DNA of 64,000 bases, from contig NC_043009.1 of assembly GCF_006345805.1 (NCBI RefSeq), positions 46,190,001-46,254,000 of the forward strand. The letters run 5' to 3'. Below are positions 4,792-55,290 of the stretch, piece by piece. How positions within the stretch are numbered: position 1 is the stretch's first letter; every line of letters starts with the position of its first letter. The notes below the pieces were generated by a model that was given only the letters and a program-made list of their open reading frames with translations, searched no databases and had not been told where the DNA came from. The stretch comes from Octopus sinensis. Taxonomy: Eukaryota. Both the position numbers and the translations under genes were made by a program.

Positions 4792-5042
<251 letters not shown>

Positions 5043-14840: not shown

Positions 14841-15326
14841 ATGGCAAAAGTCGTTACTCCTCCGAGAATAGCAAAACTTGTCACAGAATTCGTATGCGAG
14901 TACAGCATATCCGATATGGCTATGACACCTGATAATCATCTTTGTGTGGCTGAAGAGGAAAGTTGTGTGTCGAAATACACTCTAACAGGGTTGTGCGTCG
15001 GACGCCTAAAGTTACCAGACTGTTACTTGGGAGGTGTTTGTTGTCTCCAAAGTGCGTACGGTCGGCAACTTTCTTGTCTTGGTAAACAATGGAACGACGA
15101 AGCTTATATTCCCGGAAGATTAGCAGTCCCTACGTTCTTCGGAAAATCTGCTGGTCGAGTGCTGATTTTAGACGGTAGTTCAGGTGATCAATTCGGACAG
15201 ATCAAAGCTGAAGTGGATACAGGAGATTACACTTACTGGTCCGTATGCGACCTGGGAGTCGATCGCGGACTTGTTTTGGCACGCCAGGGCCACGTTGCTA
15301 CAACTAAACAGGACAGTTGTGTCGAG
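14841..15326 (+). CDS. Coding exon 1 of a beta-propeller (NHL-like) + SOCS-box protein
   Basis: ATG at 14841 with an in-frame TAA just upstream (14823). 162 open codons of non-repetitive sequence with propeller-blade-like segments (ISDMAMTPDNHLCVAE; GRVLILDGSSG). Ends at donor GAG|GTAAGA (phase 0). Confidence 0.85.
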
Positions 15327-16738
15327 GTAAGATGTTATAATATTTCATTGTTTACTCGGATATTAACCCTTATACTTTTTTTTTCTCCTTCTTTTGGAGG
15401 TAAGAAATGAAAACTATAGTCTATTTAGTGACGTTTTGGTATCTCAGAACTATACTTTTAGTCGTTTATTAACCAATAATATGTAAAGCTCGCTCGGTGT
15501 GAACGAATTTATCTTGTCTCTTTGTTTACGTTAAACTTTTAAAAAATAAACTGCTCATAATTTTAACCTCACCAAACGAATTTTGACATCTTATTAGAAA
15601 CTTTATGGGATTAATATTATCATGTACTTTTTAAAAATAACGATACCATTTCTTGACAACAACTAGTAAAATTGTCTACTGGGATAGTAACGCGTAAGAG
15701 AATTCTCTGTTAAACTATATCTTCCACTACTATTATCATTATTGTTGTTTTTGTTGTTCATAATATATATATATTATTATTGTTTATTATAAAATATCTC
15801 GTTTAGTAGTAAATAACTTTGAAAATATTCTGATAAGCTTTACAGGTTGTTGGCCACTAATTTTGAAAATGGAGTATATTACAGTATTTATTAACTTGAA
15901 TATATATCCTCGAAATTTTGGCTTTTTGCCTAACCAAAGGAAATGGCTCACACAAACGCACTTGCGTGTATTATTGTCGATATAATCTTCTCTCTCTCCT
16001 AATTTTTCGTCGAGATAACTTTTGTAATTCTTTGTTACGCATTAACAATAGATTCTCCTCTAAGTCACATCTCTAGAGTTAAGCAATTATGACTTAATCT
16101 TCTCTTACATAAACCATTTATATTTGTTACATACACGTTAGCTCCATGCTTATTAATACTAATTAATAAATTAGAAATAAAAAGTAGCTCTAAAAAACGT
16201 ATTTGTTTCCAACATTATTTACATATCTCACTTCCGATTCTCTAGTCACGCAGTTGTTTAGAGTTACTTCCCTTATACTAATGTGTTGCATGTTACTTCT
16301 AAACATGGTCATAGCTAAGGTGAAGCATGCTGCATTAATTTCGAGACTAGTTGTTTATATTATTTACTTACCTATCACAACCAAATAGAAAGGAATATTT
16401 TCTATAATCTATTAATGTAATTTTGAATGTAATATCATATCGATTTTTCCCCTGAAAACATTAAGATTGCATGAATTACACTCTTTAACAGGGAGAAAGA
16501 TCCGAAAATTCATAAAATACATGGGAGAGAACTTGTTTCTCAATGTTTGATTTCGTTCGAAGCTGTTCGCTGGTATTGCCAATCATTGCTACTGCTTGGA
16601 AAATCAGAGCTTTGGCTCTGATTTTCCCAAGCAGTAGCAATAATTGGCAGGATCAGCGAATAGCTTTGAACGAAATAAAACCTTAAGATGTATTATGATT
16701 CCCATATAAATATATAAATGATATATTATAAATATAAA

Positions 16739-17143
16739 GGATCTTTTCGGTTTGAACGGCAGTTTTTTCTAGCGATGTCTATGAAATTGTCACCCATAAT
16801 TATGACCCTAGTATCGATCTATTGCATTTCAATCTATTGTAGGGTTAGGGGGAAGGGTATCTTTTTTTTCTTCACAAATGTAAATAAACCCAATCTGTTT
16901 CTTAAACGAGGGACATATTCATACGGCACAGAATGTTTTTTTTACCTCAATAGTGTCAGTGATTGGTTGAAATTGCAGATATTGAAGAAAAAAAAACAAC
17001 AAATATCTTACAAACTATGGAATTTTCTCAATAAAGCCAAGAGAAAAAGATGTTTTATAAACACATTCTACCAGTATACGAAGTTTAAAATTTTTTAGCT
17101 ACCTAGAAATTGTTAAAAACTGCCATTCAAACCGAGAAGATCC
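16739..17143. mobile_element. MITE, ~405 bp, GGATCTTTTCGGTTTGAACGGCAGTTTTT terminal inverted repeats
   Basis: ~29-bp TIRs. 8-bp TSD AATATAAA at 16731-16738 and 17144-17151. Paralogs at 35517-35928 and 51388-51796. Confidence 0.9.
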
Positions 17144-17702
17144 AATATAAATATATATATACATTATTATAAAGATACTACCTCATCTACTCATCCTAGA
17201 AATGGGTTGGCTACACGGCTACTACATAAATCTCCTGACTAGTTGCTACTCCACCACCAATGTATTTGAACTGTGATAGATAAGGGGAATAAGGACAAGG
17301 GGTACGCTATGGTCCGAGAGACTGAGTTTGGGAAGGTGAGTTGAGACATTGGCGAACACAGTCCCTCCCTGCATGCACTGCCCTATTTCTATCACTGTGT
17401 ATTAGTATGTGCGCTATTAACTGCAGAGTAAAAGGTTACTTTTACTGTATCCTTTGGGGTCTGGCCAAGTCCACAAATTTGGAAGAGAATAATTCACAAA
17501 CCTGCCTCCTTTTTCGGTCACCAATATTATTTCAAGGATGCTTCGATATGATCGCTCGATCTGCTAGAAATAGCAGCCAAATCTCTCTCCAATTACATCC
17601 TTCCCCTCATCATCATTTAATGTTGACCTTCCATGCTGGCAGAGTTTGGATGGTTCAACAGGAACTAGCAAGGCTGCATCAAGCTTTGCTGTCTACTTTG
17701 AC

Positions 17703-19383
17703 ATGGTTTCTATAGCTGAATGCCTTTCCTAATGCCAACCACTTTACAGATTGTACATGGTGGTTTTTATGTGGCACCAGCAGCAGTGAGGTCACCAAGT
17801 AACTTGCTCGACAAGACCTCTCCACTGAAGTAGTGAGCAGTATTGAAAAAGGTGTCTTGCGGTACAGAAGTAACAAGGCTGCCATAGGTAGAGAGAAGGA
17901 GAGGAGAGAGAGAGAGATGGTGAAGATGAGACAGTGGTGGGGTCATACTCCTAAGTTACAGGAAGATTCATAAAGTAAAGGGGATTGGGGATTGGAAAGC
18001 ATAGGGTGAGCAAGATTTTGAAATTGCAAAAGGTAAGACGGAGAGTGGAGGGATTGTTGAAAGGAACATTTTAAGTGCAGGTAGGTTTGTGAAGAATAGA
18101 TGGAGAGGAGTACAACAGATTGTAAGTCTGAGGAAGGGGGGGGGTAGTGTTGAAAGATGAGTAGTTGGATGGGAGAGATATTCATAAGTTTTTGTGTGGC
18201 GGTGGGGGTGACATGACTCTACAGCCTTAATTTCACGTAACTGGATGGGTTTTCTGAAGCACGACAAATCAATAATTGTCATGGTCCTTTGTCATCTCTG
18301 CTGTGAGGTTCAGCATCTGAAGATCATTTTTCATCTCTTTGCCCACATCTTTAATAAATACAAAACAAAAATATATAATCCAAATCTGCAAAATGCTAAC
18401 GAGTTCTTACATGAATAAATAAATAATAAACACAAAATACAATAAAATAAAAAATAATATAAAATAAGCAGACCTGCAACTGAACATTGTCCATAGATGC
18501 ATAAAAAATAATATTTGTTTCAAATTTTGGTGCAAGGCCAGCAATTTTGCAGTAGAGGCTAAATTGATTACATCAACCCCAGTGCTCAACTGGTACTTTA
18601 AAAAACCCCCAAAAGGATGACAGGCAAAGTTGATGCCAGCAGAATTTGAAATAATAATATATATTGGTTTCAAATTTTCGCACAATGCCAACAATTTGGG
18701 GGTAGGGGCTAAGTTGATTACCTTCTCTCCAGTGCTCAACTTAGTACTTATTTTATTGACCCCCAAAAATATGAAAGGTAAAGTTGTTCCCAGCAGAATT
18801 TGAAATAGTAATAATGTATATTAAAACAGAAACCAAACTTGTAAATTGGAGAATGTGTTTCTAGATACACTGTGCCTGATTAAAGATGGTCATTTGCTTT
18901 CTAATCTTCCCTCCTACTACCCATCTTTCAACACTACCCCCTCCCCTTCCTCAGACTTACAATCCATTGTACTCCTCTCCATCTATTCTTCACAAACCTA
19001 CCTGCACTTAATATGTTCCTTTCAGCAATCCCTCCACTCTTCGTCTTACCTTTTGCAATTTCAAAATCTTGCTCACCCTATGCTTTCCAATCCCCAATCC
19101 CCTTTACTATATGAATCTCCCTGTAACTTAGGAGTATGACCCCCACCACTGTCTCATCTTCACCATCTCTCTCCCTCCTCTCCTCTCCTTCTCTCTACCT
19201 ATGGCAGCCTTGTTACTTCTGTACTGCAAGACACCTTTTTCAATACTGCTCACTACTTCAGTGGAGAGGTCTTGTTCAGCAAGTTACTTGGTGACCTCAC
19301 TGCTGCTAGTGCCACATAAAAACCACCTAGTACAATCTGTAAAGTGGTTGGCATTAGGAAAGGCATTCAGCTATAGAAACCAT
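17703..19383. repeat. Long inverted duplication (~475-bp arms, ~730-bp spacer)
   Basis: 17703-~18175 is the reverse complement of ~18906-19383 with scattered mismatches. Near-identical ORFs 17943-18185(-)/18846-19139(+) and 17679-17885(-)/19201-19425(+). Confidence 0.95.
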
Positions 19384-21898
19384 ATTGCACAGATTAAAAT
19401 AGACTGGACAGTGGAGAGAATGTAACATGTCCACATTGTAACACTATACTCCATATGATTCATCACTAAATGTTGCAGAGTGCAGCAGGCTTTCCAAGTA
19501 AGTAGAGACTTTAGTGTATCTGAAGCATCGATTCTGTAGATTGTACCTGATTGCCACTGTTAAGTCAGAGCAGACTTAGGGCTATGAGTGTCTCATTTCT
19601 GTTGAGTGAATGAGAAGTGTTTTACCTCAGAGTAGAATACTTGTTAGGATATATGTGGTTTGCCTTTAGTCATCCTACATATGTCTTATGTCCTTAGAGG
19701 AAAAGCTCAGCTGCTCAATGAAGTTTCAACCATAACCAGCAACAACCAAACTGGTCTGATGAGGTTTCTGGTAGAATAAACGTCCCTTTAATCCTACAGA
19801 ATTTTAGTCACTTTTCTATTATTGACAACCAATTTTTTTTTATATTTACAAAGGAGTTTGTAAGTAAACTATTAAACAATCACCCAATTCCTTGTCCTCC
19901 TTCTTGAGGTAGTTGGAGCTATTCTGAAAGTTTGCTGATTAACTATTACGCCCATCTCACAAATGTAATAGTTTATTTACAAATAAATTTATAAAAAGTG
20001 GTTGGCAATAACAGGAAAGTACTTAATATTACAATATGGTGTTGAAGGCTTTGGGGCCTATATATATATATATTTTTTTTTTATGTGTGATTCTGATTTA
20101 GCTTCTGTTCAACTCTGAGCAAGCAGATCCATTATAAAATGCTTACCAGCCATGGTTATCTTGGTAATCTCAGACTTTGTGAATTTAAGAATAGTGTTTT
20201 CTCAAATTTTTTTTGCTGAGGTTCTGGACTAAAAATTGCTTGTGTGCAACTTTTGTCTTTCATTGCTCCTTTATGTGAGTAGCCATTGCTCAAATGCCAT
20301 GTTGACCAACTAAACAAATGCACATCATTTTTATGTGGATATTTCTATGAGTATAAAATTACATGATTAACTTTTCAATTAAAAAATTACATTTTCATCT
20401 TAAAAACCTTATGCATGCACATTTTTTCCCCTTTGTAAATGCACATGCACAAAGATTGAGGGAACATTGCCCAGGATTACATTATCCTAAGGTTTTTTAA
20501 GCATGGTGTGAAATGACTTGACTGATATTTCAAGCAGTTCAAGTCGCTGTGTTATGGTTACTGGTTTGTACATTGTAATTGTTTTAACATGAGATCGATA
20601 ACGACAAATTTCGAACAGTATTCAAGGAAGTAATATTGTTATTCTGCATTTTATGTGCAAGTTTTAACATGTTTGACTGCACATCTGGGATTGATCAAAT
20701 ATGTACAAAATATGTACTGGAAGTCAATTCTATTGATTGTTTTCTTCACCAACAAACTTCTTTATTAAAATCAATATGATAAACCATTGTTTGGTCTGTA
20801 ACTTTCAGAGTAGTTGAGTGATCTTTATGTGGTTTGTATTCACAACAAAAGACATAAGCGTTGGTTTAGAGCAAAAGGTGTTAACAGACGGAAACGGGAC
20901 AAGATTACAACATTGATACTTTTCAGGTGACTGGCTCTCAAGAAAACCTCAGTAAATATCATTTCTAAAAGATAAAAAGGCCATCAGTTTCAGGATCTTG
21001 TTGTAGAGGATGTAAAGTTTTCTGGTTACTTTATCGATTGACTTAGATCAGTTTTTCTTAATAATGGGCAAGCTGTTATCATGTCTACATTTTACACACA
21101 CACACACACACACACATGTATTTGTATATACATGTGTGTATGTATGTGTGTGTGTGTATATACACACACACACACACACACACATGATTCAACTAAACCC
21201 TTTAACGTGTTCCTTCTCGAGCCATGCCAGGCTCATAAGGGCCAGTTTCCCAGTTTCACTGGTCTAGAAATTCACCACCTGGATGGGACGCTGGTCTGTC
21301 GCAGGATTACTCATTTTTGCCAGCTGAGTAGACTGGAGCAACGTGAAAATGAAGTGTTTTACTCAAGAACACAACGCAGGTCTAGGAATCGAAACCACAA
21401 CTTTACGATCATAAGTTCAACACCCTAACCACTAAGCCACACGCCTCCACTTGGCTGACGTCCATTGACTGAGATAAGTAGAAGATAAAAGATGTAGATA
21501 TATTGATACATTTGTTCTTTATTCTCCCCTTCAGCTATCTAAGCACACATATAGATGGGAGTTTGTGTGTGTGTGTGTATCATGCTTTTTAGTAACATGT
21601 TTCATGGCTTGTCTGAGAGTTTATTGAGGTAGACTTTCTCAGGCTTTGGTTGACCCAGCTAATGCTATAGTAGAAGGTACATGCCAAATGTGGCACTCAG
21701 ACCAAAACCTTGTGGCTGGGAAGTGAACTACTTAATCACACAGCTGTATCTACTGTCTGGAAGAAGTTTTCTTCCCAACCACATGCTTCTGGATTCAGTC
21801 CCACTGTGTTGCACCTTGGGCAAGTCTCTTCTACTATAAAATCAGGCTAACAAAAGCCTTGTGAGTGGATTCAGTAGGCGGAAACTGAAAGAAGCTTG

Positions 21899-22860
21899 TC
21901 ATCATTATTTAACATCCGTTTGCCATGCAGGCATGGGTTGGACGGTTCAACTGGGGTTTGGGAATCCAGGGGGCTGCACCAGGCCCCAATCTGATCTGGA
22001 AGTCTTTCTACAGCTGGATGCCCTTCCTAACACCAACCACCCCGAGAGTGTAGTGGGTGCTTTTTACGTGCCATCGGCATAGAGGCCAGAGGGATTGGTT
22101 GGTGCTTTTTACGTGCCACTGGCATGGAAGCCAGTCAAGGTGGCATTGGCATCAGCCACATTTGGATGGTGATTTTTATGTGCCACTGGCATGGGGATCG
22201 CAACTACAATTTCTATTTGATTTTGATGTACTTGAATCAGTAGGTCTCCTCACGCATGGCATGTCGCCCTACGATCCAAGGTACCTTTGAGTAGGCTGGT
22301 TATGCAACACTGGTGTAGATTACAGCTGGGAACTTACTTTATTTGCCAAGTCTTCTCAGTCACAGCATATTTCCAGGGGTCTCGGTCTTTTGTCATTGCC
22401 TCTGTGAGGCCCAACGCTTGAAGGTCATGCTTCATCACCTCATCCCATGTCTCCCTCTAACTTGGATTCCTTCCAATCTACCTTTCACTCTGAGCGAGAG
22501 ACCTTTTGTCACCAATAGGGGTAGCAGCTTTCTGAACTTTGCCCAGGCTATTCTTATTCTAGTGGTAACACTCTCTGAGCATCCACCCCCACTACAGACT
22601 TGGTCACCTAGGTAGCAGAAGCTATCAACTACTTCTAGTTTCTCTCTCTGGCATGTGATGGAATTTATTTTCTGAGCATCTGTGGTGTTTATTATTGCCT
22701 CTGTGCATCTGTGGTGTTTATTATTGCCTCTGTGCATCTGTCAAACATGAAAGCTATCTTCCCAGTTAATCTCCCTTTGATGTTGCTGCACCTCTTATGT
22801 GTCCATAGCTTACACTGGGTATAACTTAGTTTCTACCTACACCTTTTCTACAGATCGAGC
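21899..22860 (-). mobile_element. 5'-truncated RTE-type LINE
   Basis: EKLEVVDSFCYLGDQVCSGGGCSESVTTRIRIAWAKFRKLLPLL plus the family 3' UTR. Homologous to 32948-34539. Confidence 0.85.
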
Positions 22861-23039
22861 AGGGCCACCTACCTGAAGGAGTGTGTGATGTATTCACCTT
22901 CTTACTTATTAGAACTTTGGTCTTTGCAACATTGACTCAAAGGCCCTTCGATTCTAAACCTTGCTTCCACACCTGAAATTTCTTCTCTAGTTCTGATAGT
23001 GATTCTACTATGAGGGTAAGGTCACCAGCATAAAGAAGC

Positions 23040-23612
23040 TCCCAGGGGCAACCTGTCTTGAATTTCTCTGTTATTGCCTGGAGGACTATAATGAATAAGA
23101 GGTGGGATGGGATTATCCATTACGAATTGGTTGGATGGAACCAAACAGTCAACAAGGAACTCTGTGTTCAGCAGATGGAACGACTCAATACGGCTACTCA
23201 AGAGAAAAGACCTAATTGGCAGCATAGAGTTCTTCTGCTGCTCCACAATGCCCACACTCATATCACCAATATGACCAAGGAAGTCATTCAAACGTATGGC
23301 TGGGAAGTGCTGCCATACTCTCCTGATTTGGCACCAATGGATTTCTGCCTCTTTTGATCTCTTTCAAATGCTATGCACAGAGTTTTGTTCAATACTGATG
23401 CAGAATTGAGAGCTTGGTTGGATCAATTTTTCAAGTCGAAATCCAGTGATTTCTACCAACGAGGAGTTTAAAATCTTGTTGAACATTGGGAAGAAGTTTA
23501 AACAACAAGAGTTGAATACATTATTTATTAATTAGCTGTTAGTTTTTTATTAAACCTTTTAAAAAATTTAAATTTAAAACAACGGTGGCTACTTAATCGC
23601 CAACCCAACTGA
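23040..23612 (+). mobile_element. 3' half of a decayed mariner transposase
   Basis: WDGIIHYELV...LLHNAHTH...GWEVLPYSPDLAPMDFCLF (ORF 23058-23357), continuing to a C-terminal EY-type end. Confidence 0.85.
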
Positions 23613-24071
23613 TGATGCCCTTGTTGGGAAAGTGGACCATCATAAGCTTTTTAGTTGACTTGCTTTATCTGCCCTTTTGTGCATGTAAAAAACAGATGCT
23701 TGGCTCTTATAAGATAATCAATAAGCAGTCTGAAGTATTTCATAAATCTTTGTCGTATTTTTGTCCAGTGTAACACAAAACTTTATTACACAGCAAGCTT
23801 CCAGATGGTTTTCGTGTCCTGATTGCATTCTGCAAACTAATCAGCTGGGACAAGCAGTGTTTAGAAGGGTGAATTCAAAGTACTGTTACAGCCATCTATT
23901 TCAATCTGGAAAACAAAAGGTGGCAGGTCAGCTTATTAGATGTACAGGAATGATATACTAAAATTACAATAATCTAGGTTAGTTGTAACTACCTCTCCTA
24001 AAAAAGTCTCAAAACTCATGAAATGTATCTTTTGTATATGTGTGTTTGTGAGTGATTGTATGTGCGTGCAG

Positions 24072-24267
24072 TCCGAGTCAGACGCCATGATAGATCGTTA
24101 GCCACTGCACACATTTTTTTTCTGTGTACCTTTCTGTAGAAGAGCGTAGGCTTGAAACGTAAAAGACTTTTTCTATTCCTGAGTGCTATACTAATACATC
24201 TGTTTGTTTTTTACACCACCTGTTTTCGTCTTTTGTTTTTTTTCGTACACTTTCCCTATATATATAT
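24072..24267 (+). repeat. Dispersed ~200-bp repeat carrying a hammerhead-like motif; second copy ~37045-37240
   Basis: Two homologous copies ending in ...CTCCCTATATATA. Contains CTTT-CTGTAGA-A-GAGC-GTAG-GCTT-GAAACGTA-AAAG. Confidence 0.7.
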
Positions 24268-24271
24268 CTTA

Positions 24272-25070
24272 TCTCTCTCTATATAAACGGCAGTTTGTCT
24301 GTCTGTGTGTCTGTCAGGTTGTACCCTCACCCTGACCACGGCTTTCAACCGATTCTAATGAAACTTGACACACACATAGCCCAATGTCATAATTCAAAAC
24401 TAACGCAGCGAAAATTTTGAAAAGTTCCCCCAGTTCTGAAAAAAAATCGATAAATTCAACATGGGTCGAGAATCTAAGCTTTTTATATGCAACACATTTT
24501 CTACAGACTGTCTAGGGGACGCAACTCGACCTTTTTAACTCTCGGAACACGTGGGGTAAGTATCCCAAAATGTATAAAAATGTACAAAAACGGCAAAAAA
24601 GCGGGCAGCAATGTAAGTGACAACAACGAAAAAGTCAAAAGTGACCAAACTGAACAAACGAATGGAAAAGGTTTTTTGATGCACACGACAAAAGCGGTTT
24701 ATAATAAACCAAGAGTTTGCAAGTAGCGTCCGAGGACCCTTAGGGTACGTCAAAAATTTAAGGTAAAACGTTTGGGGTGGTAGTTATAAAGAAAGTGTAA
24801 ACAAAAAAAGTATTCGAATAATTCGCGGCTGCAGCAGCTATTAGCAGAAGTGGCGGTGTTGGGGGTAAAGTCTCGAATGTAATTTCTTCCTGGTAGGAAT
24901 TGGTTGGGTTGAATTATCGATAGCTGTTTGATAGTTATTTGGGAGTGAAGAGAAGACATTGCAACCTACACATGCGCCTTCGTTCCCTAGTGGGAAAGGG
25001 CTAGATTGGGATTAGTCGTTGCCTACTAGGGGCTCTTACATACCCGGGCAACGCCGGGCTATGCTGCTAG
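24272..25070 (+). mobile_element. Non-autonomous Helitron
   Basis: Inserted A|TC...CTAG|T with no TSD. Subterminal hairpin CCCGGGCAACGCCGGG at 25043-25058. 5' ~270 bp shared with 37483-37864. Confidence 0.8.
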
Positions 25071-25094
25071 TATATATATATATATTAGTGGAGC

Positions 25095-25405
25095 ACTAAG
25101 AGCACCATCCGAGCGTGATCATTGCCAGCATTGCCTTACTGGCACTTGTGCCGGTGACATGTAAAAAAAAAAACACGATTTTTCCATGACTGTTGCCAGT
25201 ACCACCTGACTGGCCCCCATGCTGGTTGCATGTAAAAGCACCCACTACACTCGGAGTGGTTGGCATTAGGAAGGGCATCCAGCTGTAGAAACTCTGCCAA
25301 ACCAAGATTGGAGCCTGGTGCAGTCATCTGGTTTGCCAGTCCTCAGTCAAATCGTCCAACCCATGCTAGCATGGAAAGCGGATGTTAAACGATGATGATG
25401 ATGAT
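25095..25405 (+). mobile_element. RTE 3'-end fragment ending in (GAT)n; similar + copies at 26145-26510, 31495-31762, 35165-35345, 41690-41970
   Basis: Matches the 3' UTR of the LINE at 32948-34539 (…GGAAGGGCATCCAGCTGTAGAAAC…GGACGTTAAACGATGATG). Confidence 0.85.
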
Positions 25406-25905
25406 ATATATATATAGTTAAATACATATATTAATGTATATGCTTTGTGTATTTTCCGGTGGCAGCAATGGCATAGTGGAGTATATAACTCATGTCACTA
25501 GTGCTAAAACACCTTAGACACATGGACACCCTCAGTCACATTTGGGAGTGATGGACATCAATGTTTCACCATTTTTATGGCTTATCAAAACCACCTACAT
25601 GCCTCGGCTGAAGGCAAGTCAGCTAGCCAGTCCAATGACTTATATGTTAATGGCTTGTAAAATCCTGCGCTGGTATGCTTGGAAATTGCATACCTAAGAG
25701 AAAATTTACATACAAAGTAAAAGCAGCTCTAGTGTAATAAATTTTGTTAAATACATATACTAATGTATATGCGTTGTGTATTTTTCGGTGGCTACACTGG
25801 TGTAGCATTGCCAATGTGAAAACACCAGCGACATGAGTCTTATATACTCTGCTTCACCATTGCAGCCACCGGAGAATACACAAAGCATATATATTTGTAT
25901 ATGTA

Positions 25906-26069
25906 CCATAATCTGGGGTAAATAGGGACAATAACCGGGGAAAATATTTTAGCACAATAAAGTTGAGATGACTCAAATTGACACAAACTAGCACAATTTG
26001 AGTCATCTCAACTTTATTGTTCTAAAATATTTTTTCCCGGTTATTGTCCCTATTCACCCTGGATTACAG
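25906..26069. mobile_element. Almost fully palindromic 164-bp MITE with TA TSD
   Basis: ~75-bp arms pair with few mismatches around a 13-nt loop. TA at 25904-25905 and 26070-26071. Confidence 0.85.
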
Positions 26070-26988
26070 TATTTAACATTATATATTATACTAGACCTGC
26101 CTTTACTTCATATTTAAATATATATACATGTATATATATGGAAGAGAGAGTTTGCTGCTCTGGCAACCATCCGAGTGTGATTGTTGCCAGAGCAGCAAAC
26201 TGACTTCCGTGCCGGTGGCATGTAAAAAGCACCATTCGATCATGATCGTTACCAGTATCACCTTACTGGCACGTGAAAAGACATTTGAGCGAGATCGTTG
26301 CCAGTACTGCCCGACTGACCCTTTTGCCGGTGGCACGTAAAAAGCACCCACTACACTCTTGAAGTGGTTGGCGTTAGGAAGGGCATCCAGCTGTAGAAAC
26401 TCTGCCAGATCAGATTGGAGCTTGGTGCAGCCATTGGTTTGCCAGTCCTCAGTCAAATTGTCCAACCCATGCTAGTATGGAAAGTGGACGTTAAACGATA
26501 ATGATGATGACTACCATCAGTCAAGAATGATCCTGCCCCTGCATATATATGTAAAAATGTGGGCAAGTTTTTTGAGAAAGTTGTCTGTTAGCACATGTAC
26601 TTTTTCACAAAAGAGATGTTTACCCAAAACAAGGCTGCTAATTTGAGCTGATACAACTTGGGCAACACTGTCACCATGACAGCTTCCTGCTGTCAGAGGC
26701 TAAAGGTACTGTAAAACCTCTTTTAGACCCTTTAACTGTTCCATTGATACACTGCTCTAGGATAACTTATTTTATAGCGAAAGGTAAACTTGATCTTCAG
26801 CGAGATTAGAACTTGGAACACAGACAATTGAGATGAATACTGTGAGGTATCCTAGCCAATGCTTTCCAACCACAATTCCAGATTCAGTTCCAGTATGGCA
26901 TCATGGGCAATATCAATAATAATAATAAGAAGAAGAATAATAAAGATTATTATGACATTGCACAGCATTACCTATTATTCTTTTAATA

Positions 26989-27494
26989 CTGTAAATCCTC
27001 GAGTATAATCCGCCCTTGAGTATAATACGCAGGGGACTTTTAGGGGGCAGCACCACTGAAAAACCTAAACCTTGTGTATAATACGCACCCCTTCTCTAAC
27101 TTGAGTCAAGGAGGTCTATATAACGTCCTTGGTTTGTAAAAATGTATATGGTAACATCCTTTATTATTATTATCATTGTATATATATAACATAATGCAAA
27201 CATGTAGCTTCTTTGTGCATTTTGTTTGCAGAAAATAGAGAAATAAAAGTAATAACGTTTAATAAATGTTGCTTAATGCAAGTTATGGATGATTCTTTTA
27301 TGACTTCATTGCTTTCAGGCTTAACTTAAGGTATTTTTGCACCCGACATCACAAACTGCATCTGAATAAACATTGCCAGACAGCAAATAGAGACTCGGAC
27401 ATTGCTTAGAAAATAATTTTCATTTTTAAGCTCGTATATAGTACTCACTAGGGATTTTGGGGAAAAAATGCGGATTATACTCGAGGATTTACAG
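26989..27494. mobile_element. pogo/Tigger-type MITE (506 bp)
   Basis: Perfect 25-bp TIR CTGTAAATCCTCGAGTATAATCCGC with TA TSD on both sides. Confidence 0.9.
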
Positions 27495-30235: not shown

Positions 30236-30467
30236 TATTTCTTTACTACCCACAAGGGGCTAAACACAGAGAGGACAAACAAGGACAGACAAACGGATTT
30301 AGTCGATAATATGACTCCAGTGCGTAACTGGTACTTATTTAATCGATCCCGAAAAGATGAAAGGCAAAGTCGACCTCGGCGGAATTTGAACTCAGAACGT
30401 AACGGCAGACGAAGTACTGCTAAGCATTTCGCCCGGCGTGCTAACGTTTCTGCCAGCTCGCCGCCTT
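30236..30467 (-). mobile_element. SINE family A
   Basis: 16-bp TSD CTTTTCATTCAATACC at 30220-30235 and 30468-30483. Confidence 0.92.
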
Positions 30468-32947
30468 CTTTTCATTCAATACCGCTCGGAGTTTTCATCT
30501 AATTTGATACTTTTCTTTTTTTTTTTTTTTTTGTTATTTAAATCGAGATATTTAAAGACAGAAAGACTTTTGTTCTGTTAAAAGTGACAAGTTTTGGAGA
30601 TGCTTATTAAACAAATTGTTTTTATCTCCACGTGTAACTATATTTCAATGTTATTCTTTCCCTTGACATTACACAAGGAATCTCGAACTAAAAGGAAAAA
30701 ATAAACAATTCTATTATCTCCCTTACATCATAATTTCATTTTCTTACAAAGTTACTTCTCTTGATATTAAACTTTTTCTTTGAAAGAGTTAACCTTTCTG
30801 TATTACTGTCTCACTGCAGTTTGTAAGGACGACTTAACACAATCCGATGTTGTAAAAACAGTGAAACTAGTCGGTTCGAAGCTAATTCTATGCTATTCGA
30901 AAACCTCCGTAGAACAATTTCACGGTAGGACAAAACGATACGTCAATATCACTCCATTTACATATCGATTCCTACAGCTACACACATCATTCGATCTTCT
31001 GATATGCCGAAGAACATCTACGCTATTACTCGATTTGTTAGAAACAACCCTCGAATTACCTTCACTGACATATGCCAGTACAAGATACATTGGGTAGTGT
31101 AGTTCTATTTACCTGAAAACGACGTGATGGTCATGGCTGAGATGATCTGCAGAGTCAGAGTTAACCTTCTGCTGGACAACAGCGACTCTTGAGGAGTTAA
31201 TAGTAGAACACTGTTGTGGTAATGATACTTTGAGTGGATCCTGTAGTATTGAACGCATGAGATGGTAGAAGGGGTTGTCCTTAACTTCTGAGAAGGACCC
31301 CCTCAGACTGATGAAATAAATGAGGTTTATGCTTAGCTATGGTTATTGGATGGTTAAAGCCTGAAGAGAGGAAGAGGGAAGAGTGATGGAGGTTTGAAGG
31401 GGGGGTTATGTTTTTAAGAAGGTCGGATAAATCATAATGTTTAGTGTATGAGGTGCACACTTCATAATAATTAATAACAAATAATTAATATGGCCCCCTG
31501 GCCCCTGTGCTGGAGGCATGTAAAAAGCGCCATCCTATCGTGGCCGTTTGCCAGCCTCGTCTGGCACCTGTTCAGGTGGCATGTAAAAAGCACCTACTAC
31601 ACACACGGAGTGGTTGGCGTTAGGAAGGGCATCCAGCTGTAGAAACACTGCCAGATCAGACTGGGCCTGGCGCAGCCTACTGGCTTCCCAGACCCCAGTT
31701 GAACCGTCCAACCCATGCTAGCATGGAAAACGGACGTTAAACGATGATGATGATGATGATGACAAAAATATCTGCAACTAACAGAGAAGGCTTCCTATTA
31801 AAGCTTTCAACCATTCTGTTTATTTGCTAGTTTTTATTTTATTTTATAAACTATTTTGTCTTTCAGCTGGAATTGTGAAAGAAGACTGTAACAGTTGTAA
31901 AAGTATCCATTGATCCTAACATGATTTGAAATCCGTTACCTTCATCTTTGCTGGGTCAATAAAATGAATATAGATTGGCAACGCATTGACATTGGTTTCA
32001 TCGGTCCAGCTCACTTTGATCATTTCTGTTGAAGTGCAAGAGAGTTTATAAAATAAATTTGAAAACTAACAAACCAAAGAATGGCTGAAGGCTTTAACAG
32101 TAAGGTCTAGCACTTAGTTGGGAGTAGTTTTGTGTTATTGTCTGACGGAGAACTCTCAGATTTTTTGTCAAGTCTATTTTACTATTATCAACATTTGCTG
32201 TCTCCTTAAACTATGATTAGCTGACCCTCTTCCCAGTTCGAGGTGCTTAGTTCACGCATTTCCTTAAACCCAACATATTCATTGATTCATTCATTAAAGT
32301 CTTATCACACAGTCACTTATTTATTCTCTAAATTTTGTCTTAGATTGTCTGACGGAGAACTCACAGATTTTTCAAATCTATTTTACTATCAATATTGCTG
32401 TCTCGTTAAACTATGCTAAGCCGATCACCCCCCCCCAATATTTCCTCCCACGTGTTCTTGACCACTCCCCCCCTCTCTATTTTACTCTGTCTGTTTCTCT
32501 CTCTATATATATTTCAGTATGTCTCCCTCTTTTGATTACCACTCGCTTCGCCAAGACTTCCTCCACCACCACCACCACCCTATATAAACTAGCGCATGCA
32601 CACAGACTCCCACTCGCTTTCAATCCCCTGCCGAAGAATAACGGATCCCTGATGTACAGATTAGAAATTTTCGTCTTTCAACCTCGTTTCATCTACTTTA
32701 CTATTTCTGTGCAGATCATAAACCCTTCCGGGTACTACTTAAGAAGTGTGGTCCCGGTGCATGCGCTCACATAGTCGCGCATCTGCGCTGGCTAGTCATG
32801 ACTAGTTGATCCTACAATGACTACCTAGCAAAGTAAATAAAATACAAAATAAATATTTTTTTTACACAAAGTAAATAATTTTTTTTTTAAACAAAGTAAA
32901 TAATTTTTCTAAACAAAGTAAATAAAATACAAAAACACAAAGTAAGG

Positions 32948-34539
32948 ATCAACTGTACCTGGCTTTCGTTGACATGGAGAAAGTCTTTGACAGGGTCCCC
33001 TGATCCCTTATCTGCTGGTCAATGAGGAAACTAGGGATAGATGAATGGTTAGTGAGAGCTGTGCAAGCCATGTACAGGGACTCTGTCAGTAAGGTGAGGG
33101 TTAGCAATGAGTACAGTGAAGAATTCTGGGTAGAGGTAGGGGTCCACCAAGGTTCAGTCCTCAGCCCCCTCCTATTTATCACAGTCCTCCAGGCAATAAC
33201 GGAGGAATTCAAGACAGGATGCCCCTGGGAGCTCCTCTATGCTAATGACCTTGCTCTAATTGCTGAGTCACTATCAGAACTAGAGGAGAGGTTTCAAGTA
33301 TGGAAACAAGGATTAGAAGCGAAGGGCCTTAGAATCAACCTAGCTAAAACCAAAGTCCTAATAAGTAGGAAGGCAGGCAAACCACAAATCCCTTCGGGTG
33401 GATGGCCCTGCTCGATCTGTAGAAAGGGCGTAGGTAGAAACTCTATAAGATGTACCCTGTGTAAGCTATGGACACATAAGAGGTGCAGCAATATCAAAGG
33501 AAGGCTAACTGGGAGGATAGTTTTTGTATGTGGCAGATGCTCGGGAGCTATGAATAACACTGAAAATGTGCAGAGAACAACTTCTGCCACATTCCAGGGA
33601 GAAAAACTAGAAGTAGTTGATAGCTTCCGTTACCTAGGTGACTAAGTCAGTAGCGGGGGGCAGGTGCACTGAAAGTGTAACTGCTATAATAAGAATAGCC
33701 TGGGCTAAGTTCAGAGAGCTCTTATCTCTGCTGGTGACAAAGAGCCTCTCGCTCAGAGTAGACTGTACGACGCATGTGTACGAACAGCCATGCTACATGG
33801 TAGTGAAACATGGGCCGTGACTGCTGAGGACATGCATAAGCCCGCAAGGTGTGAAGCCAGCATGCTCTGATGGATGTATAATGACAGTATGCATACTTGC
33901 AAAGTGTTAGTGCCTTCAGAGAAAGGTTGGACCTAAGAAGCATCAGATGTGGTGTGCAAGAGAGACGATTGTGCTGGTATGGTCATGTGGCAAGAATGGA
34001 TGTGGATAGCTGTGTGAAAAAGCGCCACACCCTAGCAGTTGAGGGAACCTGTGGAAGAAGTAGACCCAGGAAGATCTGGGATGAGGTGGTGAAACACGAC
34101 CTTCAAACATTGGGCCTTACCGAGGCAATGACTAGTGACCAGGACCTCCATGCTGATGGCACGTTAAAAATACCATTCAAGCATGATCGTTACCTACATC
34201 GCCTTACTAGCACTTGTGCTGGTGACACGTGAAAAAGCATTCGAACGAGGTTGTTGCCAGTGCCGCTGGACTAACTCCTGTGCAGGTGGCACATAAAAAG
34301 CACCATTTGAGCGTGGACGTTGCCAGTACTGCCTGACTGGCCCTCGTGCCAGTGGCATGTAAAAAGCACCCACTACACTCTCGGAGTGGTTGGCATTAGG
34401 AAGGGCATCCAGCTGTACAAACTCTGCCAGATCAGATTGGAGCCTGGTGCAGCTATCTGGTTCGCCAGACCTCAGTCAAATCGTCCAACCCATGCTAGCA
34501 TGGAAAGCGGACGTTAAACGATGATGATGATGATGATGA
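32948..34539 (+). mobile_element. 5'-truncated, inactivated RTE-type LINE (RT with embedded PHD-like finger, 3' UTR, (GAT)n tail)
   Basis: YLAFVDMEKVFDRV, GVHQGSVLSPLLF, LLYANDL (YADD changed to YAND), FRYLG, then stops and frameshifts. (GAT)n tail. Confidence 0.92.
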
Positions 34540-35516
34540 CTGATATCAATTCCGACAGGTCATTAACCGTTGTTTTAATTAAGAATAGTTGAAAGAAAAA
34601 TATGTGCATGTATTAACTGGATTTACATACAGAAAGAATGCAACATGAAAAAATATAATTAAAGAAGTTTCTTTCTTTATTATTTAAATATTAAGAGGAG
34701 TTCCTTTCTTTATTATTAATTTGTTTTGTATGCCTGTGTCCTTGCTAGCTGCATAATCATCATTGTCATGGCTTTTTTAACATGGTCAGAAGGTATTTGA
34801 TGAGGCAGGTTTTCTACAGCCGGATGCTCTTCCTTTCACATTTTCGTGGAAGACTGGGAACAAAAGTGACACCACTTGAATAATGACTTTCACTTACAAA
34901 TATAGTGAGATGTTCTGACAAGGACACACACACACACATGCTCATGTACATGTGCACACATACATGAACGACTGGTTTCTTTCAATTAAATGGCTCCAGG
35001 TTATAGGTGAAAACATTGGATCAAGATGCCATGCGGCAGAACTAAACAGAAGACCATGTGGTTAGCAAGCAAACTTCTTAAGAACACAGTCATGTCTGTT
35101 AATAAATGTAAAAAATGTACATGAAATGCTCATTTCTTCGAATTTTCCCCATCTCTGAAGTGGATGCCGGTGGCACGTAAAAAGCACCATCCGATCGTGG
35201 CCGTTTGCCAGCCTGGCCTGGCCTCTGTGCCGGTAGCACGTAAAAAGCACCATCCGATCGTGGCCATTTGCCAGCCTCGTCTGGCACGTAAAAAGCACCA
35301 ACTACACTCACGGAGTGGTTAGCGTTAGGAAGGGCATCCAGTCGCAGAAAGATTGCCAGTGTCACAATCACCATCATAACGTGAATTTGTAACTGGTTTA
35401 TTAGGAGCCTGTATCTCATGAGGTTAATGCTCAGAGAGTGTGAAGTTAAATATAAATAAGTATAAAAAGAAATGACTTTTAACTCAACCCTCCATTGTTT
35501 TTATAGGAAACTCATC

Positions 35517-35928
35517 AGATCTTTTTGGTTTGAACGGCAGTTTTTTCTATGAAATTGTCACCCATAATTATGACCCTAGTATTGATCTATTGCATTTCAA
35601 TCCGATTTAGGGTTAGGGTTGGTTAGGGGTGGGGGGAAGGGTATCTTTTTTCTTCACAAATGTAAATAAACCCAATCTGTTTCTTAAACATGGGACATAT
35701 TCATACAGCACAGAATGATTTTTACCTCAATAGACGTCAGTGATTGGTTGAAATTGCAGAAATTGAAGACAAAAAAACAACAAAGATCTTACAAACCATA
35801 GAATTTTCTCAATAAAGCCAAGAGAAAAAGATGTTTTATATAAACACATTCTACCAGTATATGAAGTTTAAAATTTTTTAGTTACTTAGAAATTATGTTA
35901 AAAACTGCTGTTCAAACCAAAAAGATCC
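35517..35928. mobile_element. MITE (GGATC-TIR family), 84 bp upstream of the exon 2 acceptor
   Basis: Homologous to 16739-17143. TSD AACTCATC/AAATCATC (1 mismatch). Confidence 0.88.
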
Positions 35929-36012
35929 AAATCATCCCTGCCCCACACCAGTCGTATTGTCTCAACTTTATTTCTGTCTGTGACTTCTAATTTGTTAATT
36001 TTTTTTATTCAG

Positions 36013-36430
36013 GTGATGTTTCGTAACTACCGAATGGGAGACATAGAGAAACCTATCGGTTTTGTGTGGTACATCAGCTCTATCAGCCCAGATGTGATAA
36101 TTGTTAGTGATGAAGACATCCGAGGACTGGTTATGTGTACACTCCAGGGAGAAGTCATTACCCAGTACAGTGACTATGGCTTCAATCCAAGTGGCCTTTG
36201 CCCCGATCCTTATCGTGGTTGTATATATGCATCCAATGGAGAAGGAAACTGTGTGATACGACTAACACCTGATCTTGAATATGACGGGGAAATTGTTGGA
36301 GCAGCTCAGGGCCTACGTAATCCTTTTGTTGTTAGTCTCTCCTATGATGGACGATTTCTTGTAGTTGCTGAAGATACATGGGATATAGGCGAAGACCTAC
36401 CAACTCCTATTAAAGTGTTCTCCTTACCAG
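36013..36430 (+). CDS. Coding exon 2 (propeller blades ~4-6)
   Basis: Acceptor TTTTTTATTCAG|GTG in phase 0, matching exon 1. NHL-like motifs FNPSGLCPDPYRGCIYASN, LRNPFVVSLSYDGRFLVVAE, IKVFSL. Donor CAG|GTAACA (phase 1). Confidence 0.9.
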
Positions 36431-38588: not shown

Positions 38589-38808
38589 GGTGGCAAGTTG
38601 GCAGAAACGTTAGCACGGCGGGCAAAATACGTAGCTGCATTTTGTCTGCCATTACGTTGTGGGTTCACATTCCGCCGAGGTTGACTTTGCCTTTCATCCT
38701 TTCGGGGTCGATAAATTAAGTACCAGTTACGCACTGGAGTCTATGTAATTGACTTAATCCCTTTGTCTGTCCCCTCTATGTTTAGCTCCTTGTGGGCAAT
38801 AAAGAAAT
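38589..38808 (+). mobile_element. SINE family A
   Basis: 17-bp TSD ATTCTTAATTTGATGAC at 38569-38585 and 38810-38826. Confidence 0.9.
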
Positions 38809-39090
38809 AATTCTTAATTTGATGACTGTAGGAAAGAAAGCCCCTATGATATCTCACTGCAAAACCAATGTTGGACACAGTGTGGAGTTCTTCAGAATTA
38901 TAAATTGAAACCCATCTTTGCTCATGTTTTCCCTATGTGCACTATACCACAAAAGTTCAAGTTTGGACATCAGTTGCTTCATTCTTCTAAATTTAGGAAT
39001 ATATTTGATTCTTTAAATATATTCCTAAATACTACTTCCTTAACTAAATGAAAAACTCTATTTCAAATTTAGTTTTGTATGTATTTCTAG

Positions 39091-39216
39091 ACAAGATGAT
39101 GCCTCTGTTATATATCTGCCGCAGGAATATTCGTAAACTGCTTGGTCGTACGCTTCTGTCTGCAGTTCCGTTTCTTGGTTTGCCAAAATGTTTACAGAAT
39201 TATTTACTTTATGCAG
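39091..39216 (+). CDS. Coding exon 3: SOCS box
   Basis: Acceptor GTATTTCTAG|AC in phase 1, matching exon 2. Encodes (D)KMMPLLYICRRNIRKLLGRTLLSAVPFLGLPKCLQNYLLYA, with BC box P-L-x3-C-x3-I and Cul5-box-like LGLPxxLxxYL. Donor CAG|GTAAGT. Confidence 0.9.
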
Positions 39217-39536
39217 GTAAGTCAAATAATATCTGTATGCTTGCCTGTCCATTTGTTTGTGTCTATAAAACCATCCATCCATGTACATCTCTCTCTCTCT
39301 TTATCTGTCTGTTTCTTTCTCTGTCTCGCTGCATGTACTAGCAGGAGAAAAAGCACTGACTACATTAAATAGAATGTATTTATTCATTTGAAAGTGATGA
39401 GTTACTCACCAACCATTCTGTCACTTTTGTACGTTCTGACAGATGTGTGAATCTTAGAATGGCAGTGGAGTGGATCACCAACTTCAAATAAATGACTCTG
39501 CACATGCACGTATGCATGTGCGCACACGCACACACA

Positions 39537-43212: not shown

Positions 43213-43251
<39 letters not shown>

Positions 43252-43326
43252 CATAAGTCATGTAAGAGACCATAAGTCAGGAAAATATATATATATTTAC
43301 ACACACACACACACACACAACTGCTG

Positions 43327-43378
<52 letters not shown>

Positions 43379-43467
43379 CGTGTGTATAGGTCATATAAGA
43401 TACCATAAGTTAGGAAAAAAATATATATATATTTACACACACACACGCACACACACAAAACTGCTAG

Positions 43468-43504
<37 letters not shown>

Positions 43505-44159
43505 AGAGTAACATAGTTATTACCCATCTGATTATAGCATTTATGACTTGCTTTCACAAAATAAATACATTCATTCACCATTGTGAATACTTTATTTTAA
43601 TCTTTATTTCACTTCTGAACTATTTATGTTATTAAAAATGAGTGATATATATTTAATATCTTCGCACTATTACCAAAACACTCATATATAAAAAAACAAC
43701 TCCTTGTTGTTTTTAAAATGTTCTTCAGATGACTCCTCCCACCACTTATAAATAAATAAAATGACAATAAAAACAACAAATACTGTTGAAAGACTTGACA
43801 GAATGTTTGTATTGAAGAAAATATCTAATTGATACTCAAAACTTTAACACTGTTTTATACATATGATCTCTATTGAAGCTGAGCTTTACTTTGTTTTTAC
43901 TGAATATATTTTATTTTATATTCCACCACCTTCATCCCCATCACTCAGGTTGTATTTTGCATTCACAAAGTATCAGAAATTAAATGTGATCATATCTAAT
44001 TTTGTTTATTAATTCAAACTAGTTTCTCTTTACCTTTATGATATATCACTTTCGTTTACCGAAAGTTATTTATGAATGATTCTAACCAATAGATAAATGG
44101 CAGGAGACAAAAACTATTTGATACGACAGTGTTGTTTTTTTCTCTTATGTTTCACTCAG

Positions 44160-44170
44160 GTATACTGTGA
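44160..44170 (+). CDS. Probable terminal coding exon (G-I-L-stop) followed by 3' UTR
   Basis: Long pyrimidine tract GTTGTTTTTTTCTCTTATGTTTCACTCAG|GTATACTGTGA. Phase 1 completes ...YAGIL*. AATAAA at 44358. Other acceptors at 43159 and 43949 cannot be excluded. Confidence 0.55.
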
Positions 44171-55039: not shown

Positions 55040-55290
55040 TACAAACATACATACATACATGCATACATACACACATACATACATTCATACATACATAATA
55101 CATATATACATACATACATACATACATACATACATACATACATACATACATACACATATACATACATACATACATACATACATACATGCATACATACATA
55201 CATACATACAAACAAACATACATACATGCATACATGCATACATACATACATACATACATACATACATACATACACATACATACATACATA
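55040..55290. repeat. (TACA)n microsatellite
   Basis: Direct inspection. Confidence 0.95.

What the first reader, a model, noticed from the sequence alone, without database searches (positions are those of the whole stretch)
14841..44170. Four-exon gene for a six-bladed NHL-like beta-propeller fused to a SOCS box: candidate undescribed Elongin BC-Cullin E3 substrate receptor
Seen: four exons join by GT-AG in matching phases (0, 1, 1) to a 1041-nt CDS (~346 aa), with a 20.7-kb first intron. About six repeats of the 'P-x-G/hydrophobic...D/G...hhV' blade pattern are followed directly by a BC box and Cul5-box-like motif. Established: SOCS boxes recruit Elongin B/C and Cul5-Rbx2, and the classical families pair them with SH2 (SOCS/CIS), ankyrin (ASB), SPRY (SPSB), WD40 (WSB, TULP4), Rab (RAB40) or neuralized (NEURL2) domains. 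NHL propellers normally sit behind RING/B-box/coiled-coil in TRIM-NHL proteins and can bind protein or RNA. Inference: this protein replaces the TRIM RING module with a SOCS box, giving a CRL5-type receptor with a propeller substrate- or RNA-binding face. I do not recognise a named gene with this architecture.
Basis: partly seen in the sequence, partly recalled or inferred. Interest (0 to 1): 0.85.

Follow-up and report, generated by a model that had tools for sequence, protein, structure and literature searches.

The report
Cephalopod propeller protein with SOCS box
This is a real, conserved octopus gene found only in cephalopods; public databases list it as "uncharacterized". Its protein joins a probable NHL-type beta-propeller to a genuine SOCS box, so it most likely hands target proteins to a cullin ubiquitin ligase, which is a modest new variation on a well-known theme.

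Summary
The gene is real. The annotated last coding exon is 42562-42566 (TT TGA), and all cephalopod orthologs and the cuttlefish mRNA contigs end in ...AV*.

The C-terminus is a bona fide SOCS box: Pfam PF07525 scores 35.9 bits against a cut-off of 23.5 in the octopus protein, and all 7 orthologs match the model. The BC box is perfect and invariant. The cullin box reads L-G-L/V-P, not the LP-phi-P needed for Cul5, so Cul5 versus Cul2 stays open.

The N-terminal 300 aa have no detectable relative outside coleoid cephalopods in 1.84 billion representative proteins. Only aa ~190-282 resemble NHL repeats significantly. Six blades is plausible (24 strands in a low-confidence model) but not shown.

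There is no evidence of TRIM ancestry. Propeller-plus-SOCS receptors already exist (WSB1/2, KLHDC1).

Verdict: a lineage-restricted new variant of a known kind, of moderate-to-low interest.

The parts
14841..15326 (+). Coding exon 1 (aa 1-162), from ATG to the GT donor, phase 0. It holds the N-terminal closure strand and putative blades 1-3, including the fast-evolving loop aa 70-104 (15048-15152).
   Evidence: borders; identical to P0003; the same exon end is seen in P0032; the loop is 20% identical between octopus and cuttlefish, against 74-90% for neighbouring stretches.
15327..36012 (+). Intron 1, 20,686 bp. It is filled with transposon debris (reverse transcriptase plus PHD fragment, mariner fragment, foldback-like inverted repeat).
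36013..36430 (+). Coding exon 2 (aa 163-302, ends in phase 1), holding putative blades 4-6.
36184..36363 (+). The only stretch with significant NHL-repeat similarity (aa 220-279, putative blades 5 and 6).
   Evidence: every phmmer stretch to four multi-NHL proteins falls within aa 176-283, most of them within ~200-280. NHL-repeat HMM, 10 bits; hhalign probability 79-88%; translation.
39091..39216 (+). Coding exon 3, a symmetric phase 1-1 exon of 126 nt that encodes exactly the SOCS box (aa 302-343).
   Evidence: Pfam SOCS_box aa 305-341, 35.9 bits; 84% nucleotide identity to Argonauta, the only non-repeat conserved island in this stretch.
39102..39131 (+). BC box PLLYICRRNI (aa 306-315). It fits (S,T,P)Lxxx(C,S,A)xxx-phi and is invariant in all orthologs.
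   Evidence: Consensus from PMC4878042.
39174..39209 (+). Cullin box LGLPKCLQNYLL (aa 330-341). The first Pro of LP-phi-P is Gly in all orthologs; the stretch fits phi-P-x-x-phi-x-x-x-phi.
   Evidence: PMC4812663; PMC4878042.
42562..42566 (+). Coding part of the true last exon (TT + TGA, giving Val344 and stop). The 3' UTR follows; its end was not determined.
   Evidence: gene span; exact match of the annotated gene end.. Argonauta and O. bimaculoides equivalents; cuttlefish mRNA ends ...GCAG|TCTGA; the best 3'UTR match to the cuttlefish mRNA is at 42618-42629.
44160..44170 (+). It is not supported by any annotation or ortholog.
   Evidence: it is conserved among Octopus species at 94-97%, against about 90% for the surrounding 2.6-kb block in O. 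bimaculoides, so this does not discriminate.

Best explanation
This is LOC115218653, a single-copy gene restricted to coleoid cephalopods. Its 344-aa product has an ~300-aa all-beta domain, most probably a closed six-bladed propeller of the NHL/SGL class. A C-terminal SOCS box follows, encoded by its own phase 1-1 exon.

Most likely mechanism: the BC box binds Elongin C/B, the cullin box recruits a cullin-Rbx module (Cul5-Rbx2 or Cul2-Rbx1, undecided), and the propeller face binds the substrate. The protein would thus be a substrate receptor of an ECS-type cullin-RING E3 ligase.

Shown here: gene structure, conservation, the SOCS box, and partial NHL similarity.

Inferred: the full propeller, Elongin/cullin binding, and ligase function.
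For: - Gene model: identical to the RefSeq protein for aa 1-343.
- Orthologs: found in Octopus bimaculoides, O. sinensis/vulgaris, Argonauta, Acanthosepion and unnamed decapodiform transcriptomes. Octopus and cuttlefish are 73% identical overall and 83% in the SOCS exon.
- Splicing: spliced mRNA contigs exist.
- SOCS box: Pfam SOCS_box E=8.7e-9, 35.9 bits against a cut-off of 23.5; all 7 of 7 orthologs match the model.
- BC box: exact and invariant (consensus in PMC4878042).
- Propeller: only NHL-repeat proteins appear as remote hits; hhalign to six-blade NHL propellers gives 88% probability for aa 220-279.
- Model: the AF2 model built with NHL sequences in the alignment has pTM 0.56. Its 21 strands are consistent with 6 blades of 4 (three strands are not modelled). 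Helices fall in the SOCS-box region.
- Foldseek: top hits are the Brat, TRIM2, Thin and Mei-P26 NHL domains.
- Precedent: WSB1/2 and KLHDC1 are propeller receptors on Elongin BC-Cul5 (PMC4812663, PMC12035522).
Against: - The Cul5-defining LP-phi-P is L-G-L/V-P in all orthologs. SOCS1, which also has an incomplete Cul5 box, shows no detectable Cul5 binding (PMC4812663).
- Pfam NHL is sub-threshold: 12 bits against 20.
- aa 1-170 show no significant NHL signal, and there is no significant internal repeat.
- AF2 with orthologs only failed, at pLDDT 31.8.
- The better model (pLDDT 50.3) used an alignment seeded with NHL propellers, so its NHL-like fold is partly circular. Foldseek TM is only 0.47-0.58 with rmsd ~9.5 A.
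- There is no biochemical or expression data, and no literature.
Confidence: 0.6

Rival explanations
1. The SOCS box binds Elongin B/C but does not recruit a cullin productively. It would then act as a stability or regulatory tag for a propeller protein whose job is something else, such as scaffolding or sequestration, as has been argued for SOCS1 with its degenerate Cul5 box.
For: The cullin box lacks the first proline of LP-phi-P in every ortholog. PMC4812663 states that LP-phi-P is required for Cul5 and that no interaction between SOCS1 (incomplete Cul5 box) and Cul5 has been detected.
Against: The whole cullin-box stretch is strongly conserved over the octopod-decapodiform split (83% in the exon). 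It still fits the Cul2-box consensus. The Pfam match covers model positions 3-39 of 39.
Confidence: 0.2
2. The N-terminal domain is an enzyme-type six-bladed propeller (SMP-30/gluconolactonase/lactonase, arylesterase or lyase class) rather than a substrate-recognition module, and the SOCS box controls its turnover or localisation.
For: The Pfam SGL hit (12.1 bits, aa 210-256) is as strong as the NHL hit. Foldseek also lists virginiamycin B lyase, a lactonase and luciferin-regenerating enzyme.
Against: All of these scores are sub-threshold or come from a low-confidence model. No metal-binding or catalytic motif could be assessed. Every characterised SOCS-box protein uses its other domain for substrate binding (PMC4812663).
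Confidence: 0.1
3. One reading: a TRIM-NHL descendant in which the RING/B-box/coiled-coil was swapped for a SOCS box, keeping an RNA-binding NHL face.
For: Foldseek top hits are the Brat, TRIM2, Thin and Mei-P26 NHL domains.
Against: No TRIM-NHL protein reached E<0.001 in the exhaustive scan. The only remote hits are giant multi-NHL proteins from metagenome contigs. The Foldseek result comes from a model whose alignment was seeded with NHL propellers. There is no RING, B-box or filamin remnant.
Confidence: 0.07
4. It is an annotation artefact or a decaying pseudogene.
For: None beyond the long TE-filled first intron.
Against: The ORF is intact in at least five cephalopod species, with 73% identity between octopus and cuttlefish, conserved exon boundaries and spliced mRNA contigs in dozens of sequencing runs.
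Confidence: 0.01

Closest known systems
WSB1/WSB2 (WD40 repeat and SOCS box proteins)
   Same: A beta-propeller substrate-binding domain is followed directly by a C-terminal SOCS box. They are substrate receptors of Elongin BC-Cul5-Rbx2 ligases (PMC4812663, PMC12816127).
   Different: Their propeller is WD40 (seven or more blades). There is no Pfam WD40 signal here, and no sequence similarity was detected. WSB proteins are widespread in animals; this gene was found only in coleoid cephalopods.
KLHDC1 (and KLHDC2/3/10), Kelch-propeller Elongin BC-cullin receptors
   Same: A six-bladed propeller plus a C-terminal BC box and cullin box. KLHDC1 uses Cul5 and its paralogs use Cul2 (PMC12035522), which illustrates that small changes in the cullin box decide the cullin.
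   Different: They have Kelch repeats, not NHL-like ones. There is no Pfam Kelch signal here, and this protein's C-terminus scores as a canonical Pfam SOCS box.
TRIM-NHL proteins (Brat, TRIM2/3/32/71, Mei-P26, Thin)
   Same: They are the best structural matches to the low-confidence model. They are E3-linked proteins with a six-bladed NHL propeller as the target-binding (protein or RNA) face.
   Different: Their ligase module is an N-terminal RING/B-box/coiled coil in the same chain. Here there is no such module, but a C-terminal SOCS box instead. No sequence-level relationship to them was detected.
Multi-NHL-repeat proteins from metagenome contigs (P0018-P0021)
   Same: They are the only sequence-detectable remote relatives. 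Their NHL blades align with aa ~190-282.
   Different: They are 1,700-3,600-aa proteins with many tandem propellers plus PKD and other domains, and no SOCS box. The similarity is at the level of the generic NHL blade motif.

Membership tests
SOCS-box proteins (Pfam PF07525; ECS E3 substrate receptors) | Match to the SOCS_box profile above the curated gathering score | tested here: met
   35.9 bits against 23.5, E=8.7e-9, aa 305-341 covering profile positions 3-39 of 39. All 7 orthologs match the model.
SOCS-box proteins (Pfam PF07525; ECS E3 substrate receptors) | BC box (S,T,P)Lxxx(C,S,A)xxx-phi | tested here: met
   P306-L-LYI-C311-RRN-I315, invariant in all orthologs. Consensus from PMC4878042.
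SOCS-box proteins (Pfam PF07525; ECS E3 substrate receptors) | Cul5 box with LP-phi-P | tested here: not met
   L330-G-L-P333 in octopods and L-G-V-P in decapodiforms; the first Pro is Gly everywhere. PMC4812663 says LP-phi-P is required for Cul5. The stretch does fit the Cul2-box consensus phi-P-x-x-phi-x-x-x-phi (LPKCLQNYL).
SOCS-box proteins (Pfam PF07525; ECS E3 substrate receptors) | Physical binding of Elongin B/C and Cul5-Rbx2 (or Cul2-Rbx1) | not testable with these tools
   This needs co-IP or pull-down, or at least a complex structure prediction.
NHL-repeat six-bladed beta-propeller (Pfam PF01436, clan CL0186) | NHL repeat profile above the gathering score | tested here: not met
   11.9-12 bits against 20, for one stretch at aa 24-40. 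The best E-value among orthologs is 0.014.
NHL-repeat six-bladed beta-propeller (Pfam PF01436, clan CL0186) | Detectable homology to bona fide NHL blades | tested here: met
   Met for aa ~190-282 only. phmmer to multi-NHL proteins gives E=1e-12 to 7e-4. hhalign gives 88% (aa 220-279) and 49% (aa 191-282). aa 1-170 are not significant.
NHL-repeat six-bladed beta-propeller (Pfam PF01436, clan CL0186) | Six blades closing into a propeller | tested here: inconclusive
   AF2 with orthologs only: pLDDT 31.8. AF2 with NHL sequences added: pLDDT 50.3, pTM 0.56, 21 strands consistent with 6 blades of 4, and the N-terminal strand 12-19 positioned to close blade 6. Foldseek gives NHL domains at TM 0.47-0.58. 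The alignment input makes this partly circular.
TRIM-NHL | N-terminal RING, B-box and coiled coil before the NHL domain | tested here: not met
   The Pfam scan at E<=10 shows only SOCS_box, SGL and NHL. The propeller starts about 10 residues from the N-terminus.
WSB (WD40 + SOCS box) | WD40 repeats | tested here: not met
   No WD40 hit at E<=10. WD40 structures rank below NHL in Foldseek.
KLHDC (Kelch + BC/cullin box) | Kelch repeats | tested here: not met
   No Kelch hit at E<=10.

The most novel reading that the evidence does not exclude
Coleoid cephalopods evolved their own class of cullin-RING substrate receptor. A symmetric phase 1-1 SOCS-box exon was joined to a lineage-specific NHL-type propeller, creating an 'NHL-SOCS' family with no counterpart in other animals. 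Its propeller would recognise a cephalopod-specific protein or, like TRIM-NHL domains, an RNA, coupling RNA recognition to Elongin BC-cullin ubiquitylation.
Probability: 0.15. Interest if true: 0.6.

Novelty: new variant of a known kind. Interest (0 to 1): 0.35.

Why it matters
If confirmed, this gene adds an NHL-class propeller to the short list of domains known to be coupled to a SOCS box. It would also give cephalopods a lineage-specific E3 receptor under strong purifying selection. That makes it a tractable entry point into cephalopod-specific proteostasis, or possibly RNA-linked ubiquitylation. Its Gly-for-Pro cullin box is a natural test case for what decides Cul5 versus Cul2 recruitment.

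It does not change the general picture. SOCS boxes are known to be shuffled onto many binding domains, and propeller receptors on Elongin BC-cullin ligases (WSB, KLHDC) are established.

Tried and rejected
- phmmer and a profile search against PDB sequences: no meaningful hit, even for the SOCS box alone.
- AF2 with the seven orthologs only: failed, pLDDT 31.8.
- Homolog search with the SOCS-box exon alone: the word index returned no candidates, so the nearest SOCS-box subfamily could not be identified.
- Self-hhalign for internal repeats: nothing significant (best E=0.78).
- NHL-repeat HMM built from metagenome NHL proteins: detects only aa 221-252.
- hhalign of aa 1-170 to NHL blades or propellers: not significant.
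- Profile search with all orthologs at E<=10: only cephalopod orthologs or fragments.
- Literature searches for NHL plus SOCS box, cephalopod SOCS box, and the gene and protein accessions: nothing relevant.
- tblastn of the protein against the window: no second copy or paralog.
Its conservation among Octopus species did not discriminate.


Full report
**1. The observation**

Their borders are ATG at 14841, GAG|gtaaga at 15326, ttattcag|GTG at 36013, CAG|gtaaca at 36430, ttctag|ACA at 39091 and CAG|gtaagt at 39216. They join in phases 0, 1, 1.

The product equals, residue for residue over aa 1-343, a protein held by NCBI. That protein is XP_029644437.1, 'uncharacterized protein LOC115218653' of Octopus sinensis/vulgaris (P0003). 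UniProt calls the O. bimaculoides ortholog 'SOCS box domain-containing protein'.

The annotated gene span in O. sinensis chromosome CM016871.1 is 27,726 bp. Counted from 14841, it ends at window 42566, so the window is that locus.

**2. The last exon is wrong**

All annotated orthologs end ...L(Y/F)AV. The annotated gene end (...ttttactttcag|TTTGA) matches the window exactly at 42550-42573, so the last coding exon contributes only TT+TGA (42562-42566).

- Argonauta has cag|TATGA, and O. bimaculoides cag|TTTGA.
- The cuttlefish-type mRNA contigs read ...GCAG|TCTGA.
- The best match of the cuttlefish 3'UTR anywhere in window 42400-44400 is a 12-mer at 42618-42629, just after this stop. This is weak evidence (E=0.05).

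The CDS is 1035 nt and encodes 344 aa.

**3. Transcript and conservation evidence**

Proteins of 335-336 aa are encoded on 1.0-1.7-kb contigs assembled from many public sequencing runs: P0008 alone occurs on 59 contigs. Contigs that short cannot hold the introns, so they are spliced mRNAs. Their ORF runs uninterrupted across all three junction positions.

A separate ENA contig (P0032) reads through exactly at the exon 1 boundary, so the intron position is conserved.

Octopus and cuttlefish proteins are 73% identical overall: 77% in exon 2 and 83% in the SOCS exon. One loop (aa 70-104) has diverged to 20%. This is a functional gene under purifying selection, not an artefact.

**4. The SOCS box**

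Pfam SOCS_box matches aa 305-341 at 35.9 bits (cut-off 23.5, E=8.7e-9), and all seven orthologs match the model.

The BC box PLLYICRRNI fits (S,T,P)Lxxx(C,S,A)xxx-phi exactly and is invariant (consensus in PMC4878042).

The cullin box reads LGLPKCLQNYLL in octopods and LGVPKSLQNYLL in decapodiforms. The LP-phi-P motif said to be required for specific Cul5 binding (PMC4812663) therefore lacks its first proline in every species. The same review notes that SOCS1, with an incomplete Cul5 box, shows no detectable Cul5 interaction. The stretch LPKCLQNYL also fits the Cul2-box consensus phi-P-x-x-phi-x-x-x-phi.

Elongin C binding is therefore well supported by sequence. The choice of cullin is open.

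The whole box is carried by one symmetric phase 1-1 exon (39091-39216), the geometry expected of a shuffled module. That is an inference.

**5. The N-terminal domain**

An exhaustive HMMER scan of aa 1-302 against 1.84 billion representative proteins found five hits at E<=0.001.

- One is the cephalopod ortholog cluster.
- Four are giant proteins of 1,662-3,648 aa from metagenome contigs.
- The three of these that were scanned are packed with Pfam NHL repeats; the fourth is named 'PKD repeat protein' by its source.
- Every matching stretch falls within query aa 176-283, most within ~200-280. The scores come from many weak blade-to-blade matches added together.

A profile search with all orthologs at E<=10 again returned only cephalopod sequences among 6,951 candidates. 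The window holds no second copy.

Further tests of NHL similarity gave these results:

- Pfam NHL (12 bits) and SGL (12 bits) are below threshold.
- An NHL-blade HMM that I built from the giant proteins hits only aa 221-252.
- hhalign of the ortholog profile against six-blade propellers cut from those proteins gives 88% probability for aa 220-279, 49% for aa 191-282 and 13% for aa 125-256.
- aa 1-170 are not significant.
- Self-comparison finds no significant internal repeat.

**6. Structure prediction**

With orthologs only, AlphaFold failed (pLDDT 31.8).

I then added ten NHL propellers to the alignment. MAFFT placed them in register along the whole domain. The model reached pLDDT 50.3 and pTM 0.56. 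Only aa 8-62 and 218-300 are moderately confident.

It has 21 strands, consistent with six four-stranded blades (three strands are not modelled). An N-terminal strand (aa 12-19) is positioned to complete the last blade, and helices fall in the SOCS-box region.

Foldseek against the PDB ranks the NHL domains of Brat, TRIM2, Thin and Mei-P26 first (E ~4e-8), but with TM 0.47-0.58 and rmsd ~9.5 A. Because the alignment was seeded with NHL sequences, this shows compatibility and is not independent proof.

My reading is that an NHL/SGL-class six-bladed propeller is the most probable fold. It is demonstrated only for the last two or three blades.

**7. Mechanism and rivals**

The best-supported reading is a substrate receptor of an Elongin BC-cullin-Rbx ligase, with the propeller as the recognition face (confidence ~0.6). 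The rivals are:

- A SOCS box that binds Elongin BC without productive cullin recruitment (~0.2).
- An enzyme-type propeller whose SOCS box regulates it (~0.1).
No TRIM-NHL protein was detectable as a relative, and there is no RING or B-box remnant.
- An artefact or pseudogene (~0.01).

**8. Comparison with the known**

Functionally the nearest relatives are WSB1/2 (WD40 propeller plus SOCS box, Cul5) and KLHDC1 (Kelch propeller, Cul5; its paralogs use Cul2) (PMC4812663, PMC12035522). The protein is not a member of either family, since it has no WD40 or Kelch signal. It is not a TRIM-NHL either, since it has no RING, B-box or coiled coil.

It passes the SOCS-box profile and BC-box tests but fails the strict LP-phi-P test. 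It fails the Pfam NHL threshold but shows genuine remote NHL similarity in its C-terminal blades.

No paper mentions the gene or an NHL-SOCS architecture in the library searched.

**9. Verdict**

This is a real gene, already annotated but uncharacterised, and restricted to coleoid cephalopods. It combines a probable NHL-class propeller with a true SOCS box, which makes it a new variant of a well-known kind of E3 receptor. The claims of Cul5 specificity, six NHL blades and TRIM ancestry go beyond the evidence. Interest is moderate to low (0.35).

Noticed in passing
window 61433-64000: A satellite array with a 104-bp unit, about 25 copies at 94% match, running off the end of the window. It accounts for the strong negative GC skew seen there.
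   Followed up: no
window 17703-19383 (intron 1): A foldback-like inverted repeat. The arms 17703-18144 and 18938-19383 are 96-97% complementary, and a 150-bp tandem duplication (18507-18815) lies between them. It is probably a transposon remnant.
   Followed up: partly
L010 980-1052 versus L003 1008-1090: One cuttlefish-type mRNA contig uses an acceptor 14 nt upstream of the SOCS exon (extra ttcttttttctcag). This shifts the frame and gives a 299-aa product (P0002) without the SOCS box. It could be a minor SOCS-less isoform or splicing noise.
   Followed up: partly
window 15048-15152 (aa 70-104): A loop inside putative blade 2 is only 20% identical between octopus and cuttlefish, while flanking segments are 74-90% identical. 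It may be a lineage-specific surface loop.
   Followed up: partly
window 33022-33645, 23058-23357, 48039-48392: Decayed transposon coding fragments: a reverse transcriptase plus PHD-like finger (RVT_1, E=1e-12), a sub-threshold mariner-type DDE transposase piece, and a weak Tc5/pogo HTH. A short repeated element whose pseudo-ORF reads '...LQLDALPNANH...VVGAFYVP...' recurs several times in the introns (e.g. 25096-25327, 26103-26465, 35099-35419, 41614-41898).
   Followed up: partly
L001, L002, L007, L008 (gene spans): Gene length varies with intron content: 27,726 bp in O. sinensis, 32,975 bp in O. vulgaris, 32,780 bp in O. bimaculoides and 27,036 bp in Argonauta. Intron 3 is about 540 bp in Argonauta against 3,345 bp in the window.
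   Followed up: no
window 4792-5032 and 55032-55290: Long tetranucleotide microsatellites, (TATC)60 and (TACA)65.
   Followed up: no
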